A DNA stretch of 64,000 nt. Origin: Utricularia gibba (taxonomy: Eukaryota; Plantae; Magnoliophyta). Position numbers and translations under genes: made by a program. The first letter of the stretch is position 1; each line of letters starts with the position of its first letter. Shown in pieces: positions 24,796 to 32,445 of the stretch. The notes beneath the pieces were generated by a model. It was not told the origin of the DNA. It searched no databases and was given only the letters and a program-made list of their open reading frames with translations. Location of the stretch: NCBI GenBank assembly GCA_002189035.1, contig NEEC01000010.1:3410001-3474000 (forward strand), read 5' to 3'.

Positions 24796-25632
24796 CGTCT
24801 TACGGCTGTAAAATGTGGACGAAGCCTTCACTTGACTTAGAGAGGGGAGTCCCGTGGCTTAGGCCTAGGCCCAGGAGGAACCCCACCCCCACCCCAATAT
24901 TGTCAAGGAAGCAGTAATTTGGTTTGCCCCAAGGGAAAGAAAGGAAAGGGCGGGCTACACACTCCTACTCCTACTCCTGGCCAGTCGCAAAGACTGGACT
25001 GTAACACGCTACAGAGCCAGCAGCCAGCCAGAGGTAGGGACCCCGCCCCGTCCCCCGGCCTGCCTATATATACATATATATATTATTTCAAGTACACGTT
25101 GACCGTACCAAGATGGGACCCGAAGCCAAGCGCCAGGATACATCCATTGTGTGTTCTTTTGGTCACCTAATACGTTGCCTTGATATTTCTCGTATCCATC
25201 CGTTTTTGAAACTTGTGGTCAAGCTTATGAAAAATATAATAAATATATCGTATGGCATGGCACGCCTATATTGAATTGAATTTTATTCACCAAGAATAAT
25301 AATAATAATAATAGTAGTTGTAGTAATAATATTGTGTTGTTGTTGTTCATGATGGATTAAGTAAGTGGGATCGTTGGATGGTGTGATGCAGAAGCAGTTC
25401 CATCGGCATTCAGGTGGAGGGAGATTTGCAAAGCCTGTGCCTTGGAGGAGATTTGATTTCCCATTTAAATACAACCCCCAGGCACAGAGCCACGAATTTA
25501 GAATATTCTCATTACAAGAGACCATAGATTCCCCCCTGCCACTGCCCACTATAAATATACACTAAATCCCCCCCTCATGCGCATTGCATTACCTCAGGCT
25601 CCTCCTCCTCCTCCTCCTCCTGTCACACACAC

Positions 25633-27495
25633 ATGGCGGGAGAACCGGAGACCACTAAAGTCTGCTGGAAATCATCATTTCTTTTCCTGCATACCTTGTA
25701 TCGTATCATCCGTAACAGAATCAACTCCTTTTTCGCCTACATCCTCTACTTCCTCTTCCTCTCCCTCATCGGATTCGGGTTAATCAAGTCTATCAAGCCA
25801 CGAACTCCGCACCCCATCGGAGATCTCCGACTCTTCTTCACCGTCGTCTCCCAAGTCACGCAATCGGGCATGTCGGTCGTAAACATGGAGGACTTCTCCA
25901 ACCGCCAGCTTGTCGTTATGACGGCGCTCATGCTCTTGGGCAGCGAGGTATTCATCTCCATGGTTGTGCTGTACCTATCCAAGTCCCAAAGTATTAAGGC
26001 GAGGCGCAGCGAGGCCAAGGTCTCGGCTGCAGACTTGCGGAACCAGATGGAGATTAGGGTGGTGAATGATTTGGAGCAACGCGGTTCCGACTCTGTGGAT
26101 AAGAAAAACCCTATTCTCAGACAAGATTCTATCAAGTTTCTTGCTTACGTGGTTCTTGGCTATCTTCTCTTGATCCAAGTACTCGGAGTTGCAGGTCTGT
26201 GTCTCCTACTTCAGGATGCGCCAACCAACCAAAAATATATATTTTATCAATGATCCTAATGCATTCTAACTTGATTTGTTATTCCGATAGGCGTGAGCAT
26301 TTATCTGGCTGCAATTCCATCGGCAATGAACGTACTGAGAACCAAAGGAATCAAGTCCTTCACCTTCGCGCTTTTCACCGTAGTTTCGACTTTCACCAAC
26401 TGCGGACTCATCCCCACAAACGAAAACATGATAGTCTTCAGTCAGAATGCGGGACTGCTGTGGATCCTAATGCCCCAAATTCTACTCGGGAACACCTTAT
26501 TTCCACCTTGTCTGCGTCTTGTAGTATGGGTTCTGGGTAAAAGAGTGAAGAAGCCCGAAGCCGAGTACTTGCTAAGCGACGAACCAAAGCCCGTGTACTC
26601 GAGTTTGCTTCCAAGGCTCCGTACCCAGCTCTTGACTGCAACTGTTTTCACCCTTCTCCTCACGGGAGTCATCGTATTCTGCGCCTTGGACTGGAACTCT
26701 TCGGCTGTCTCGGGACTGAACCCCTATCAGAAGCTGGTGGCGATCGTATTTCAAACCACTAACACCAGACACGCCGGCGAAAATGTCTTCAACCTCGCCA
26801 ACGTATCTCCGGCTCTCCTCGTTTTCTTCGTCCTAATCATGTTGGTTTTCTGGTCCCTCCATTCTCCGCATTTTCGTTTTAAGAAAAAAATCGGCGTTAT
26901 CATGGCACATCAATTCCCAATTCAAGGCTTTTTTCTCTTCTTCAATCTCCATCTTCAAGGCTTCAACCCTCCTATCTCCTGGTTTGCAGGTATTTACCAT
27001 CCTATACGACGTATATTCCGATCGATCTACGGAGTGAAGAAGATGAAAAAAGGGTACGTAAGGTGAATGGGAGGAAGAAGAGATTAGTGGAAAACTTGAA
27101 GTTTTCACAGCCATGTTATCTGGCCATCTTCATCATCGTGCTTTGCATCACCGAGAGGAGAAGCATGAGGACGACCCCCTGAATTTCAGTCTCCTGAATA
27201 TCGTAGTTGAAGTGATAAGGTACCCAGCTTCCTTCCTTCCTTCCTTCCTCCCAGTAGCAAGTCTGAACTCAAAAGGTTGATGCGTCTTCCTTGCAGTTCA
27301 TACGGGAACGTCGGCTATTCAACCGGGTACAGCTGCGACCTCAGGCCCACACCCGACCCGACATGCGACAGCCCCTGGTACGGACTATCGGGAAGATTCA
27401 GCGCAAGGGGTAAAATCGTCATTATACTAGTGATGTACTTCGGGCGGCTGAAGCAGTTCAGCATGAGAGGAGGGCAAGCGTGGGACCTCATGTAA
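25633..27495 (+). CDS. HKT1: HKT1-type cation transporter, copy A (Gly at pore A; 4 exons)
   Basis: Pore motifs SQVTQSGMS, STFTNCGLIPTNENM, TNTRHAGE, SSYGNVGYSTGYSC; C-terminal GRLKQF. Introns at 26195-26290, about 26843-26988 and about 27220-27296. One missing G at 27167 (MEDDPLNF). Confidence 0.93.
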
Positions 27496-28637
27496 TAACC
27501 ATTCTTTCCATTGGATTACCAAAGACACCGCCGGCGCTTGAGTCGACTACTACTACCCATTAGAAAATAGAAACCTTCAAGTCCAAGGTTCTTCTGTTTA
27601 GGACACTGATGTATGTGAATTGCTAAATAAATAAAAAAAATCATTCCGAATGTTATCAAGTATTTAGGCCAAGTAGATGGAATTCCAATCCTGGCTTTCC
27701 CATATTACCCCCATTTTTTTATGAGTGGGTGTGTTATAATAATTAATCAACAGAAATGGGCATGACCCAGTTGCAACTTGCATCCCGTGATGATGGGGAT
27801 CCAAATGGGCCAAAAAAGCCCACTTGTCCGAGTAACTCAAAAGGTAGCGCACGGACAATCGTTCTCCTCAACTAGACAGACCCATGATGCCTACTTTGTA
27901 GCTCCAACTTGGGCTGGGGAATCAATCATCATTCATCAGCACGCACCCTCCCTTGTGGGGGTGAATTTTGATTTTGACAAAACGGAGCATGTGGGTTTAT
28001 TTTCTTGTCCCATTCTTTCCACATGTTTAATGAACTATTCATCAATTCAATTTCCACCATGTGCACTAGTGTAACGGCGCCGGGAATATCGTAGTTGCCA
28101 ACTTGACAAGGATAATGCCCGTTTTGACCCCCCAAACCCGAAAACTCAACTCGACCCGGTCCTTGCACATGGGTCGGGTCAGTGGAGAAAGATTAATCAA
28201 ACAACACTTCCGTCCTAATCCTTTTTCTCTTCTGGCGAGCTTATCCCATGTTGCTCACTCACTCACTCACTCTTGCTTTCCTCGAATCGAGGTGTCGACG
28301 GCCATGATCATGTCCTCAATACATCCCATCCATGCTCCTCCCAAGTCGCAAAATAGCAAGGAAGGTGTGGGTTTCTTGTGAGTGTCTGTTAACCAATGAC
28401 GAAGGGATAGATTTTGCTGATTGGTGACGATGAGAGGAGGAGTCTTGCCGTCCGTGGAATCTGATAAACAATTCTCACCAAGGGGACCACGTGAAAAACA
28501 CAGCAGCCTCTTGTCTTAATCTGAACCCCGCCCTTTAAAAACACCTGCGCTGATGCTCTGCCTCTTCTGCCCTCTGCCCCTGTTTTTCATTCCAGTGATT
28601 TCGCAACCTCTTGTACTCATCAGGGCAACTGGGGGGG

Positions 28638-30294
28638 ATGGACTGCAATCTGCTGCATCATCAGAAGCCCGGTGAGGAGCGCCGCTCTTGCTACCCTCGT
28701 CGAATCAGGGCTTTTTACGTGCACGTGACGTATCTTGTTGTCCTCTCCTCGTTGGGTTTTCTAACTCTTCAATTGCTAACCCCCAAAACGGACTACGTTC
28801 CCCGGAAGATCGACCTCCTCTTCACAGCGGTCTCCGCGGCCACCGTGTCGAGCATGTCCACCGTTGAAATGGAGGCCTTTTCAGACCCACAGCTCATGGT
28901 GTTAGCCGTTCTGATGTTCTTGGGAGGTGAAATATTCATTTCCATGATCGGGCTTGTCGTGAGAAATCTCAAGAATGAAGTTGAAGAAGACGTGGAGGGA
29001 GATTATCTTCTCGAACACGACTCCGATTCTGATGACCCTGAATATGGACTCTTCGGATACGAAAATCCCTATCTCGAGAACGATGCTTTAGACCACTTGA
29101 TTTCTTCGATCTGGAGATACATTGTGGTTGTTCATTTTCTTGGGGTAGGTTTCCTTTTCTTCTACTTGACTCTCAATCGCTCCGCGGCGGAAGTACTCAG
29201 ATCCAAAGGTCTCAAGGCCTCAACTTTCACTGTTTTCACAGTCATTTCGACGTTTAGCAATTGTGGGTTCGTGCCCACGAACGAGAATTTGATTGTTTTT
29301 CGGGAAAACTCAGGGCTTTTATTGATTCTGATCCCACAAGTTCTTCTGGGAAACACTCTGTTCCCTTTTTGTTTGAGGATTTTTCTGCGGTTTCACAGCA
29401 GCAGGAATAAGAGGGAAGAATCTGAGTACTTGCTGAGCGACGGAAACAAAATCGACTTCTTCCATCTACTTCCATCTCTGCATTCTCTGTTTCTAGCAGC
29501 TACAGCCTTCTGTTTTACTCTCATCGGATTCCTCATGTTCGCTGCCTTCGAATGGGACTCCGTGGCGTTTGACGGCCTGAATCCTTTCCGGAGAGCCGTC
29601 TGCATTCTCTTTGAAGTCGTCAACGCACGACACAGCGGAGAAACTGTCGTCGATTTATCGAAAGTGACACCGGCGGTGCTGGTATTCTTCATAGCGATGA
29701 TGTTAGTCCCACTTCCTCCTTGATTACATAACTCAAATTGATAAATCTGATCTATTCAGCAAAGCAGTCACCTTCATTGAATCGCCATTGCAGGTATCTT
29801 CCTCCATATACCTCGTTTCTACCCATCAAAAACAGGGCAGGAGAGGATGAAAAGGAGAAGAAGCAAAGAAGTGGGATTACAGAACACCTCGTGTTTTCCC
29901 AGCTCTCATACCTCGCCATATTCGTGATCGCCATATGCATCTCGGAGAAGACGAGCATGGAGAACGACCCACTCAATTTCAACGTCCTCAACATCACATT
30001 GGAAGTGATAAGGTAGCCAACCAGCAGCACTTGTGTCCGTACAACTCATTACAGATTGACCACAACGCGCTCAAAATCGCTTCTTTACATGACAGTGCGT
30101 ACGGGAACGTGGGATTCACGGCGGGCTACAGCTGTGAGCGAAGACTGATACAGGATGGCGAGTGCGTGAGCCGGTGGTACGGGTTCGTGGGGGCGTGGAG
30201 CGACCAGGGCAAAATCGTCCTTTTGGTTATCATGTTCTTTGGAAGGCTGAAACAGTTCAACACCGACGGGGGACGAGCGTGGAAGCTCTTATGA
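28638..30294 (+). CDS. HKT1: HKT1-type Na+ transporter, copy B (canonical Ser at pore A; 3 exons)
   Basis: Pore motifs SAATVSSMSTVEME, STFSNCGFVPTNEN, VNARHSGE, SAYGNVGFTAGYSC; C-terminal GRLKQFNTDGGRAWKLL. Two canonical 3' introns. Confidence 0.95.
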
Positions 30295-31059
30295 CGTGGC
30301 GGCGATGAAGCAGTTCTTGCAAATCTATTTAATGTGTTTGCTAAGAAACGACGTCGCATTGAATCATTTTTTTGTGTTCGTTTTATTTAAAACGAATAAA
30401 ACAAAACTAGCTTCTCAAATGAACGAGTGTCCGTCCCCGTGTCCGGTTCAATGGACGGACGGACGGACCACTGCGATGATGATTTAGGACACTCTCCCAA
30501 TGCATCCCACCTGTGATGGGCAACCCTGATCATTACACGTGTAATCTGGTTCGATGCAATGCATCATCTAATCATATGATGCCCACTTTACGTGAGGCCA
30601 GGGCGGTCAACTGCTGCAATGATGCCACGTCATCATCCACGGTGTCCCACCAAGTCCCCATTCCCGCCCTTAAAAATTGTAAAATGTTTGCAATAAAATA
30701 TAATGGTGCGTGCGTTTGTGGGCTTCTTCAGGTAAACTGGGCCTAACTTCCAGTAGTGGGCTTCACTGCGCAGCTTATTGGGTCAAATGATAGGGCTTGT
30801 CTAGATTAGACAATTCGAACACACAAGTACGAAGTAACCAGGTTGGGTGCATGCACACGTGCAGTGGCCAAACATGTATTTGTGCACTGCAAAAAAACAA
30901 ACTTGATGACATTCAAAATTTGTTAGAGGGAGTCCCACAAATGCAGTGCACGATCGACGAGTCACACAAAGCTTATGCGACACAAATTTAAGACGCACTA
31001 CTCACCATTTGTGTTGAATAAATATGATGTCAAAACTCCATTGCAAACCCAAGTGCGAA

Positions 31060-32445
31060 ATGAAGGTGACATTGAAGAAGTCTTGCGTTGTCCGGGCAGC
31101 GGAGCCGACATGGAAGGGAGTCATGCCGTTGACGGAATTAGATCAGATCGGCGTGGTATCCCATGTTCCGACCATCTACTTCTATCGACCGGAACAAACA
31201 TGGCTCACCCGGGGCGCTGACATTTTCACTGCCCTCACTGCTTCTCTGAGCAAAGCGTTGGCCTACTTCTACCCTTTAGCGGGCCGCCTTCGTTGCCTTC
31301 CAGGGGCCCGCCTTGAGCTCGATTGCAACAACGCTGGTGTTTCGCTTACGATGTTCGATTGTGATGGGGATATGAATGTGCTGGGAGACTTCACTCCGTC
31401 GCCGGAGTTTCATAATCTCATCCCACATGTTGATTATTCAATTTCCGTGACAGAGCATCCCCTGTTTCTTGCACAGGTCACTGCATTCAGATGTGGTGGT
31501 GTTTCATTAGGTGTCTCCATTTCTCATGCAGTTACGGATGGGCAAAGCGCTCTTCACTTCATTTCAGAATGGGCGAGGCTAGCTAGAGGAGAGGCGATTG
31601 GAGATCACCCGTTCCTCGACAGGGGAGTTCTCAGGGCAGGGGAGGCTCCACCGCCAACATTCCAATCACAAGAAGCATTTTTCAAACGCTCCCCACCGCT
31701 GATCGTGGGAGAAACCAGCTGGGAAAAAGAGGCCAACAAGAAAACCTCAACAGCGTTGCTGAAACTATCGAAATCGCAAGTCGAAACACTAAAAAATGCA
31801 GCGAACAAGCACTCCCCCGAAAACCTCTGTTACAGTCGCTATGAAGCGATCGCGGCGCACGTATGGAGAACCACCTCCCGTGCCCGCCGCCACGTGGACA
31901 ACCAGCCGACTGGGCTATCAATTTGTGTTGATATACGAAACCGCGTGAGCCCCAATATACCAAGAAAATTCTTCGGAAACGCGATCGTGGACGTGGTTGC
32001 CCACAGCTTCTCAGGCGAACTAAAAACGAAACCTCTGAGCTATGCCGCCGGCAAAATAAGGGAAGCAATCAACTCGGTGACGGACCAATACGTGAAATCG
32101 TGGATCGATTACCTGAAAAACATGGAAGATTTGTGGATGATGCAAGATATCCATGCTCTGAAATCAGGGGAGGGGATGTTCTACGGGAATCCAAATATAA
32201 GTGTGATAAGCTGGCTGAGTTTACCTCTGTATAATTTGAATTTTGGGTTTGGGACAGAGGTTTTTATGGGGCCGGGGACCCACGACTCCGATGGAGACTC
32301 ACTGCTGCTTCCGGGGGCGGGAGGCGATGAGGAGGGAGCGGTGGGGGTTGCCATCTGCCTGCAAGACGAGTGCATGAGCGAGTTCAAGGAGTTGTTCTAC
32401 AAGGAGATAGAGAGGTATGCACGCAAGGAAGATATGCAGGCGTAA
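31060..32445 (+). CDS. SHT: BAHD acyltransferase, spermidine hydroxycinnamoyl transferase-like, intronless
   Basis: AEPTWKGVMPLTELDQIGVVSHVPTIYFY, FYPLAGRL, HAVTDGQSALHFISEWARLARG (HxxxD), GPGTHDSDGDSLLLP. The DFGWG motif reads NFGFG. Confidence 0.9.
   Translation: MKVTLKKSCVVRAAEPTWKGVMPLTELDQIGVVSHVPTIYFYRPEQTWLTRGADIFTALTASLSKALAYFYPLAGRLRCLPGARLELDCNNAGVSLTMFDCDGDMNVLGDFTPSPEFHNLIPHVDYSISVTEHPLFLAQVTAFRCGGVSLGVSISHAVTDGQSALHFISEWARLARGEAIGDHPFLDRGVLRAGEAPPPTFQSQEAFFKRSPPLIVGETSWEKEANKKTSTALLKLSKSQVETLKNAANKHSPENLCYSRYEAIAAHVWRTTSRARRHVDNQPTGLSICVDIRNRVSPNIPRKFFGNAIVDVVAHSFSGELKTKPLSYAAGKIREAINSVTDQYVKSWIDYLKNMEDLWMMQDIHALKSGEGMFYGNPNISVISWLSLPLYNLNFGFGTEVFMGPGTHDSDGDSLLLPGAGGDEEGAVGVAICLQDECMSEFKELFYKEIERYARKEDMQA

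What the first reader, a model, noticed from the sequence alone, without database searches (positions are those of the whole stretch)
25840..25890. Tandem HKT1 pair with opposite selectivity filters: a eudicot HKT1 with Gly at pore A (G-G-G-G)
Seen: copy A reads FFTVVSQVTQS-G-MSVVNME (GGC at 25867-25869) and copy B reads FTAVSAATVS-S-MSTVEME (AGC at 28851-28853), a single A/G difference in the codon. Pores B-D are Gly in both. Established: Ser at this position (AtHKT1;1 S68) typifies Na+-selective class I HKTs, the usual eudicot form, while Gly typifies K+-permeable class II HKTs of monocots, and S/G swaps change K+ permeability. Copy A also has unusual neighbouring residues (A to Q, V to Q) and a divergent pore C. 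Inference: convergent re-invention of a K+(/Na+) HKT by neofunctionalisation of one tandem copy, plausibly for K+ scavenging in nutrient-poor water or from prey if the plant is carnivorous.
Basis: partly seen in the sequence, partly recalled or inferred. Interest (0 to 1): 0.88.

Follow-up and report, generated by a model that had tools for sequence, protein, structure and literature searches.

The report
Eudicot HKT1 with all-glycine filter
One of two neighbouring sodium-transporter (HKT1) genes in this bladderwort-family plant is intact, expressed and conserved, yet has independently acquired three pore residues typical of the potassium-permeable HKTs of grasses, so it may be a natural re-invention of that transporter type in a eudicot; transport was not tested.

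Summary
Copy A (25633-27495) reads GGC (Gly79) at 25867-25869. Copy B (28638-30294) reads AGC (Ser) at 28851-28853. Pores B to D are Gly in both copies.

- **Assembly error.** DNA and RNA contigs from five runs all carry an extra G behind 27168, so the real gene is intact.
- **Expression and constraint.** RNA contigs show copy A spliced in four exons, including a new 96-nt intron. GGC is unchanged in three genotypes. pN/pS between accessions is 0.25, against 0.30 for copy B.
- **Phylogeny.** Both copies sit inside Lamiales class I, far from monocot class II.
- **Rarity.** Of about 230 class I relatives, all have Ser at pore A except a separate Sesamum paralogue clade. So copy A is rare among eudicots but not unique.
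- **Class II hallmarks.** Copy A alone combines the three class II hallmarks named in the 2021 HKT review: Gly in P1, Leu after the P2 Gly, and Asn in P3. It has also lost three residues of the outer cation-binding site.

K+ permeability is a well-grounded prediction but is untested, and the link to carnivory is speculation. I rate this a new variant of a known kind, of moderate to high interest.

The parts
25633..26194 (+). Copy A exon 1a (start codon to a new splice donor); encodes M1A, pore A and M2A
   Evidence: ORF and hand model. RNA contig X4 record 4 covers 25629-26192 and joins to 26289.
25867..25869 (+). GGC, Gly79: the pore A selectivity-filter residue
   Evidence: Unchanged in 6 runs. 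230 of 230 class I relatives have Ser here.
25816..25830 (+). Ile62 and Arg66, which replace the Pro and Asp equivalent to OsHKT2;2 P71 and D75 (outer cation-binding site)
   Evidence: The mapping was checked on PDB chain 8k69_A, offset 13. The site is described in PMC6632200.
25882..25884 (+). Asn84, which replaces a Glu that is invariant in 232 of 232 class I relatives
26195..26290 (+). Extra 96-nt GT..AG intron, absent from copy B and from the Genlisea gene
   Evidence: Spliced out in RNA contigs of X4, X8 and X9. Genlisea codes straight through this site.
26291..26840 (+). Copy A exon 1b: pore B (CGL, Leu227 at 26407-26409) and pore C (HAGEN, Asn352)
   Evidence: Pfam TrkH match of 76.9 bits.
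26990..27219 (+). Copy A exon 2. The window lacks one G behind 27168 (GG where reads have GGG), which shifts the frame in the assembly only
   Evidence: The CDS is 1541 nt with a frameshift. An extra G is present in contigs of X1, X5, X4, X8 and X9.
27297..27495 (+). Copy A exon 3: pore D (SSYGNVG), Ala484 (equivalent to D501) at 27403-27405, the retained Lys487 and GRLK, and the stop codon
28638..29701 (+). Copy B exon 1, with AGC (Ser) at 28851-28853; a canonical SSM / CGF / GET class I pore
   Evidence: Pfam TrkH match. Spliced RNA contigs in X4, X8, X9, X10 and X11.
29794..30012 (+). Copy B exon 2
   Evidence: Joints 29701/29794 and 30010/30094 in RNA contigs
30096..30294 (+). Copy B exon 3 and stop codon

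Best explanation
Copy A is a working gene, not a pseudogene. It is a class I (HKT1-type) channel of the Lamiales lineage whose pore has been rebuilt.

Shown here:
- A single A-to-G transition changed the pore A filter Ser to Gly, giving a G-G-G-G filter.
- The residue after the pore B Gly changed from Phe to Leu, and the pore C motif reads GEN. These are the three filter-adjacent hallmarks of class II HKTs.
- Three of the four residues of the outer cation-binding site were replaced (P62I, D66R, D484A), as was an otherwise invariant Glu (E84N).
- The four filter glycines, the pore D motif and the M2D GRLK motif are kept.
- The gene is transcribed, spliced and under purifying selection.

Inferred:
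- Ser-to-Gly swaps at this site open HKTs to K+ and other cations.
- Copy A therefore most likely conducts K+ together with Na+, like a class II HKT. Copy B would remain the ordinary Na+-selective HKT1.
For: - **Codon and peptides:**
- **Intact gene:** contigs of five runs carry the missing G at 27168, and full-length spliced RNA contigs exist.
- **Constraint:** 10 synonymous against 8 non-synonymous differences between accessions give pN/pS 0.25 (p 0.003 against neutrality). Copy B gives 0.30.
- **Class I placement:** Lamiales clade support is 100/99. Class II monocots fall outside, and the Sesamum Gly clade is elsewhere.
- **Hallmark combination:** of 235 class I-type sequences, 223 carry none of the three class II hallmarks, 11 carry one, none carries two, and copy A carries all three.
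- **Independent definition of the hallmarks:** the review PMC7918770 names them and states that Gly at P1 gives permeation of multiple cations.
- **Departures from conserved columns:** copy A departs at 16 of 112 conserved class I columns, copy B at 5, and the family median is 1, although copy B has the longer branch.
Against: - No transport measurement exists.
- Exceptions to the Ser/Gly rule are known in both directions.
- The motif is SGM, not the class II SGL. The class II Gly before the pore B Gly and the pore D NxIF motif are absent.
- Thirteen of the sixteen departures hit residues that are conserved in both classes, including D66, E84, G104 and D355. These could reduce conduction instead of retuning it.
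- The whole lineage evolves fast: Genlisea departs at 11 columns.
- The polymorphism sample is small (18 sites).
Confidence: 0.5

Rival explanations
1. Copy A is still essentially a Na+-selective class I channel. In this sequence context the Gly is functionally minor, and the paralogue differs from copy B mainly in where, when or how strongly it conducts Na+.
For: The review lists exceptions to the Ser/Gly rule. Copy A keeps Met after the filter residue (SGM) and Cys before the pore B Gly, as class I does. The only HKT studied in a carnivorous plant, DmHKT1, is a Na+ channel.
Against: Three class II hallmarks co-occur in copy A only. The review reports that a Gly at P1 gives permeation of multiple cations.
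Confidence: 0.2
2. Copy A is a partly degenerate paralogue. It conducts poorly or not at all and survives under residual constraint, for example as a modulating partner of copy B or on its way to loss. On this view the Gly is one of many relaxed-constraint changes.
For: Copy A departs at 16 of 112 conserved columns, 13 of them at residues conserved in both classes. Two acidic residues of the outer vestibule are lost and one basic residue is gained. The other eudicot Gly form (Sesamum) also looks degraded, with pore D and GRLK altered. RNA word depth is lower than for copy B in all six RNA runs, although this is a poor measure. Unchecked scan notes report several other transporters with rewired key residues in this genome.
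Against: pN/pS is 0.25, as low as for copy B. The ORF is intact in three genotypes. The four filter Gly, the pore D motif and the M2D GRLK are kept. The changes match class II residues exactly and are not random replacements.
Confidence: 0.2
3. Copy A has shifted to a different substrate profile, for example divalent cations or a broad non-selective cation leak. The rebuilt outer vestibule, not the Gly alone, would set the new specificity.
For: The equivalents of P71, D75 and D501 are replaced while the equivalent of K504 is kept. The invariant Glu84 is lost. External cations modulate class II conduction.
Against: There is no direct evidence. In OsHKT2;2, mutating P71, D75 or D501 had only minor effects.
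Confidence: 0.1

Closest known systems
Class I HKT1 of eudicots (AtHKT1;1, PDB 8w9n; Lamiales HKT1 such as Sesamum P0002)
   Same: Same family (TrkH/PF02386) and the same phylogenetic clade, at 53-54% identity. Same four MPM units, the same two canonical introns, and the pore D and GRLK motifs.
   Different: Gly instead of Ser at P1, Leu instead of Phe after the P2 Gly, Asn at P3+2, and Glu84, Pro62 and Asp66 replaced. Copy A also has an extra intron.
Class II HKTs of monocots (TaHKT2;1, PDB 8w9t; OsHKT2;2, PDB 8k69)
   Same: G-G-G-G filter, Leu (and Ile) after the P2 Gly, and GEN in P3. These are the class II hallmarks named in PMC7918770.
   Different: Copy A is not related by descent, since class II falls outside the eudicot class I clade. 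It has SGM not SGL, Cys not Gly before the P2 Gly, and no NxIF motif in P4. The outer cation site (P71, D75, D501) is conserved in class II but lost in copy A.
Sesamum Gly-type HKT paralogues (P0310, P0319; fragments P0133, P0147)
   Same: A eudicot (Lamiales) class I-derived HKT with Gly at P1 and many departures from conserved columns (17 of 107).
   Different: They belong to the other Lamiales class I clade, so the origin is independent. They keep Phe at P2+1 and Thr at P3+2. Their pore D and GRLK motifs are altered. Their expression is not known here.
Engineered Ser-to-Gly and Gly-to-Ser filter mutants of AtHKT1 and TaHKT2;1 (as summarised in PMC7918770)
   Same: The same position and the same substitution. 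These mutants are the experimental basis for predicting K+ permeation.
   Different: Copy A is a natural allele fixed in three genotypes and accompanied by further pore changes.
DmHKT1 of the Venus flytrap
   Same: An HKT1-type gene in a carnivorous plant.
   Different: DmHKT1 is described as a Na+ channel for prey sodium. No trap or prey link has been shown for copy A.

Membership tests
Trk/Ktr/HKT superfamily | TrkH cation-transport domain (PF02386) | tested here: met
   Copy A exon 1b scores 76.9 bits and copy B exon 1 scores 82.9 bits, against a cut-off of 27. All homologues carry PF02386.
Trk/Ktr/HKT superfamily | Four pore loops with a filter Gly in P2, P3 and P4 | tested here: met
   G226, G350 and G454 are aligned with invariant Gly columns.
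HKT class I | Placement in the class I clade | tested here: met
   Copy A lies inside Lamiales class I with support 99-100. Class II monocots form the outgroup.
HKT class I | Ser at the P1 filter position (SGGG) | tested here: not met
   Gly79 is encoded by GGC at 25867-25869 and confirmed in six runs.
HKT class II | Gly at the P1 filter position (GGGG) | tested here: met
HKT class II | Leu after the P2 Gly and Asn after the P3 Gly-Glu | tested here: met
   L227 and N352. The features are defined in PMC7918770.
HKT class II | Descent from the monocot class II clade, with SGL motif and NxIF motif in P4 | tested here: not met
   Tree. The motif is SGM, the P4 region reads NIVV, and Cys precedes the P2 Gly.
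HKT class II (function) | Na+/K+ co-transport or K+ permeation | not testable with these tools
   This needs electrophysiology or yeast complementation.

The most novel reading that the evidence does not exclude
Copy A is a true functional convergence. On this reading a eudicot class I HKT has re-evolved class II-type K+/Na+ permeation through Gly in P1, Leu in P2 and Asn in P3, together with a rebuilt outer vestibule. A rootless aquatic carnivore would use it for K+ (or Na+-for-K+) acquisition from very dilute water or from trap fluid.
Probability: 0.3. Interest if true: 0.8.

Novelty: new variant of a known kind. Interest (0 to 1): 0.66.

Why it matters
Reviews from 2021 and 2026 state that eudicots have only Ser-type class I HKTs and that class II is confined to monocots. 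Copy A is an expressed, constrained natural counter-example that arose inside class I. It carries exactly the three filter-adjacent residues that distinguish class II. This offers a ready-made natural experiment on which residues set Na+ against K+ selectivity in HKTs. Its Ser-type neighbour, the Genlisea gene and the independent Sesamum case can serve as controls. HKT selectivity matters for the engineering of salt tolerance and K+ nutrition.

Tried and rejected
- **Pseudogene.** The window's copy A CDS is 1541 nt, with a stop shortly after the frameshift. I rejected this reading because contigs of X1, X5, X4, X8 and X9 all carry an extra G behind 27168.
- **Sequencing error, heterozygosity or RNA editing at the Gly codon.** Rejected: no other letter appears in DNA or RNA of three genotypes.
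- **A retained ancient class II gene in a eudicot.** Rejected by the trees.
- **The only eudicot HKT with Gly.** Rejected: the Sesamum clade also has Gly.
- **Orthologues in other Lentibulariaceae.** Three word-index searches and one exhaustive search of cluster representatives returned only the Genlisea aurea protein. Neither of the window's own two proteins was listed.
- **Synteny with the Genlisea contig.** None was found.
- **Dating the duplication.** Support for A plus Genlisea is 85/95 to 96, but monophyly of A plus B is not rejected (AU p 0.21), so the date stays open.
- **Structure prediction of copy A.** Not run, because the spliced, read-corrected protein has no contiguous reference in the window.
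- **Codon-model branch tests.** Not run. Homologue CDS were not at hand, and at 46-55% protein identity the synonymous sites are likely saturated.

Full report
**What is in the sequence.**
Two HKT genes lie head to tail on the + strand.
- Copy A starts at the ATG at 25633. Codon 79 is GGC (25867-25869), within the peptide FFTVVSQVTQSGMSVVNME.
- Copy B starts at 28638 and has AGC at 28851-28853, within FTAVSAATVSSMSTVEME.
- Copy B and the nearest relative, Genlisea aurea, both read TCG AGC ATG. Copy A reads TCG GGC ATG. The difference is one A-to-G transition.
- The filter Gly of pores B, C and D is present in both copies.

**Gene models and a trap in the assembly.**
- Copy B has the canonical three exons: 28638-29701, 29794-30012 and 30096-30294.
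- Copy A has four exons: 25633-26194, 26291-26840, 26990-27219 and 27297-27495.
- Joined as they stand in the window, the copy A exons give 1541 nt. The frame breaks in exon 2 between ...ITERRSM and DDPLNF..., with a stop a few codons later. Taken at face value this would make copy A a pseudogene lacking pore D.
- Contigs from public runs of the same organism settle the matter. Two DNA runs (X1, X5) and three RNA runs (X4, X8, X9) all have an extra G behind 27168, reading GGG where the window has GG.
- The window therefore has a homopolymer assembly error. The real CDS encodes 513 residues with all four pores.

**Expression and splicing.**
- A 1742-nt RNA contig (X4) runs from 25629 to 27655 and lacks the three introns.
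- It skips 26195-26290 (96 nt, GT..AG) and 26841-26989, and jumps from 27217 to 27295 over the third intron.
- X8 and X9 show the first joint, and X7, X8 and X10 the second. Fragments of copy A appear in all six RNA runs examined.
- X8 is listed as 'DNA?', but its contigs are spliced, so it is in fact an RNA run.
- The 96-nt intron is absent from copy B and from the Genlisea gene, which codes straight through that site and has only the two canonical introns. It is a lineage-specific intron gain.
- Copy B is also expressed and spliced in every RNA run.

**Is the Gly real and stable?**
- None of the runs shows another letter at 25867-25869.
- X5 and X8 come from a divergent accession, with 83 differences over 4.9 kb. 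X9 comes from a third genotype.
- All three genotypes keep GGC.

**Selection.**
- Between the window and the X5/X8 accession, copy A has 10 synonymous and 8 non-synonymous differences. This gives pN/pS 0.25, and a binomial test against neutrality gives p 0.003.
- Copy B has 7 and 7, giving pN/pS 0.30.
- The sample is small. Even so, copy A is at least as constrained as its canonical neighbour.

**Phylogeny.**
- In three trees, both copies fall inside the core Lamiales group of one of the two eudicot class I clades, with support 99-100.
- Monocot class II sequences (Acorus, Canna, Typha, Apostasia, Rhynchospora) fall outside all eudicot sequences.
- Copy A pairs with the Genlisea aurea protein. 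Support is SH-aLRT 90 to 96 in the quick trees and 85/95 in the careful tree.
- Copy B is a long branch of uncertain position. A clade of A plus B is not rejected (AU p 0.21).
- A and B are only 46% identical, which is less than either is to Sesamum HKT1 (53-55%). The pair is old or fast-diverged.
- The organism's name is coded by the tools. The Genlisea affinity and the very compact genes point to Lentibulariaceae, which is an inference.

**How unusual is the Gly?**
- Reviews of 2021 and 2026 state that dicotyledons 'solely contain a serine' at P1 and that class II is found only in monocots.
- In my survey, all 230 class I-type cluster representatives have Ser, apart from copy A and one other clade.
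- That clade surfaced in an exhaustive search of cluster representatives: a small set of Sesamum paralogues (P0310, P0319; fragments P0133, P0147) with Gly at P1.
- They lie in the other Lamiales class I clade on a long stem, so their Gly arose independently.
- Their pore D and GRLK motifs are altered.
- I found no paper that mentions either case.
- Copy A is therefore rare among eudicots but not unique.

**More than one residue.**
- The 2021 review names three class-specific residues next to the filter: Gly in P1, Leu after the P2 Gly (Phe in class I), and Asn after the P3 Gly-Glu.
- Copy A has all three: G79, L227 and N352.
- Among 235 class I-type sequences with all three positions covered, 223 have none of the three, 11 have one, none has two, and copy A has three.
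- Genlisea shares only the Asn.
- Copy A does not have the class II SGL motif (it reads SGM), the Gly before the P2 Gly, or the P4 NxIF motif.

**A rebuilt outer mouth.**
- Copy A departs from 16 of 112 columns that are at least 95% conserved in class I. Copy B departs from 5, Genlisea from 11, and the median of 186 full-length relatives is 1, with a maximum of 8.
- Copy B nevertheless has the longer branch.
- Seven of the departures lie in the first pore unit.
- Three of them hit the extracellular cation-coordination site described for OsHKT2;2, which comprises P71, D75, D501 and K504 (PMC6632200).
- I verified the mapping on PDB chain 8k69_A (offset 13). Copy A has Ile62 for the Pro, Arg66 for the first Asp and Ala484 for the second Asp, and keeps the Lys (K487).
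- Glu84, invariant in 232 of 232 class I relatives, is Asn in copy A.
- Most of these positions are conserved in both classes. They are therefore not convergence, and they could either retune or weaken conduction.

**Mechanism.**
- Shown: copy A is an intact, transcribed, spliced and constrained class I-derived HKT. It has a G-G-G-G filter, two further class II-type neighbours and a less acidic outer vestibule. It keeps all four filter glycines, the pore D motif and the M2D GRLK motif.
[quoted passage not shown] Copy A therefore most likely conducts K+ with Na+, while copy B stays a Na+-selective HKT1. I put this at about 0.5.
- The rivals are a still Na+-selective channel (0.2), a poorly conducting or regulatory paralogue under residual constraint (0.2), and a different cation profile (0.1).
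- Nothing here bears on traps, prey or K+ scavenging. The only characterised HKT of a carnivorous plant, DmHKT1, is a Na+ channel.
- Unchecked scan notes list several other transporters of this genome with rewired key residues. This counsels caution about adaptive stories in a fast-evolving lineage.

**Verdict.**
However, copy A is not the only such eudicot gene, and its transport properties remain untested.
- I rate it a new variant of a known kind, with interest 0.66.

Noticed in passing
window 27168-27170: The window has GG where contigs of five independent runs have GGG. This 1-bp assembly deletion puts a false frameshift into copy A exon 2, and annotation from this assembly would truncate or mis-splice the gene.
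   Followed up: yes
window 26195-26290: A 96-nt GT..AG intron interrupts what is a single first exon in copy B, in Genlisea and in HKT1 genes generally. This is an intron gain in a very compact genome.
   Followed up: partly
proteins P0310, P0319, P0133, P0147 (Sesamum spp.): A Sesamum-specific HKT paralogue clade has Gly at pore A (SGV/SGL). It arose independently in the other Lamiales class I clade and has altered pore D and GRLK motifs. I found no paper that mentions it.
   Followed up: partly
run X8 laid on window 25783-30271: The run is listed as 'DNA?', but its contigs are spliced at all HKT introns. It is an RNA run of the divergent accession.
   Followed up: yes
window 31024-32445 (+): An intronless 473-aa ORF of the BAHD acyltransferase family (Pfam Transferase, 355 bits) lies 0.7 kb downstream of copy B.
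   Followed up: partly
window 25590-25628 and 27220-27257: A (CCT)n run sits just upstream of the copy A start codon, and a (CCTT)n run sits at the start of its last intron. The read tool skips both as repeats.
   Followed up: no
homologue names: In Buddleja, Paulownia and Catharanthus, the genes of the two class I clades carry adjacent or near-adjacent locus tags. This suggests an old tandem of the two clades. In this window both tandem genes belong to the same clade, and no gene of the second clade was seen.
   Followed up: no
L001 8001-9726 (Genlisea aurea contig KE528902.1): The Genlisea gene closest to copy A keeps Ser at P1. It already has His for the conserved Asp (equivalent to D75), Asn at P3+2, and 11 departures from conserved columns. 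The pore began to drift before the Ser-to-Gly change.
   Followed up: partly
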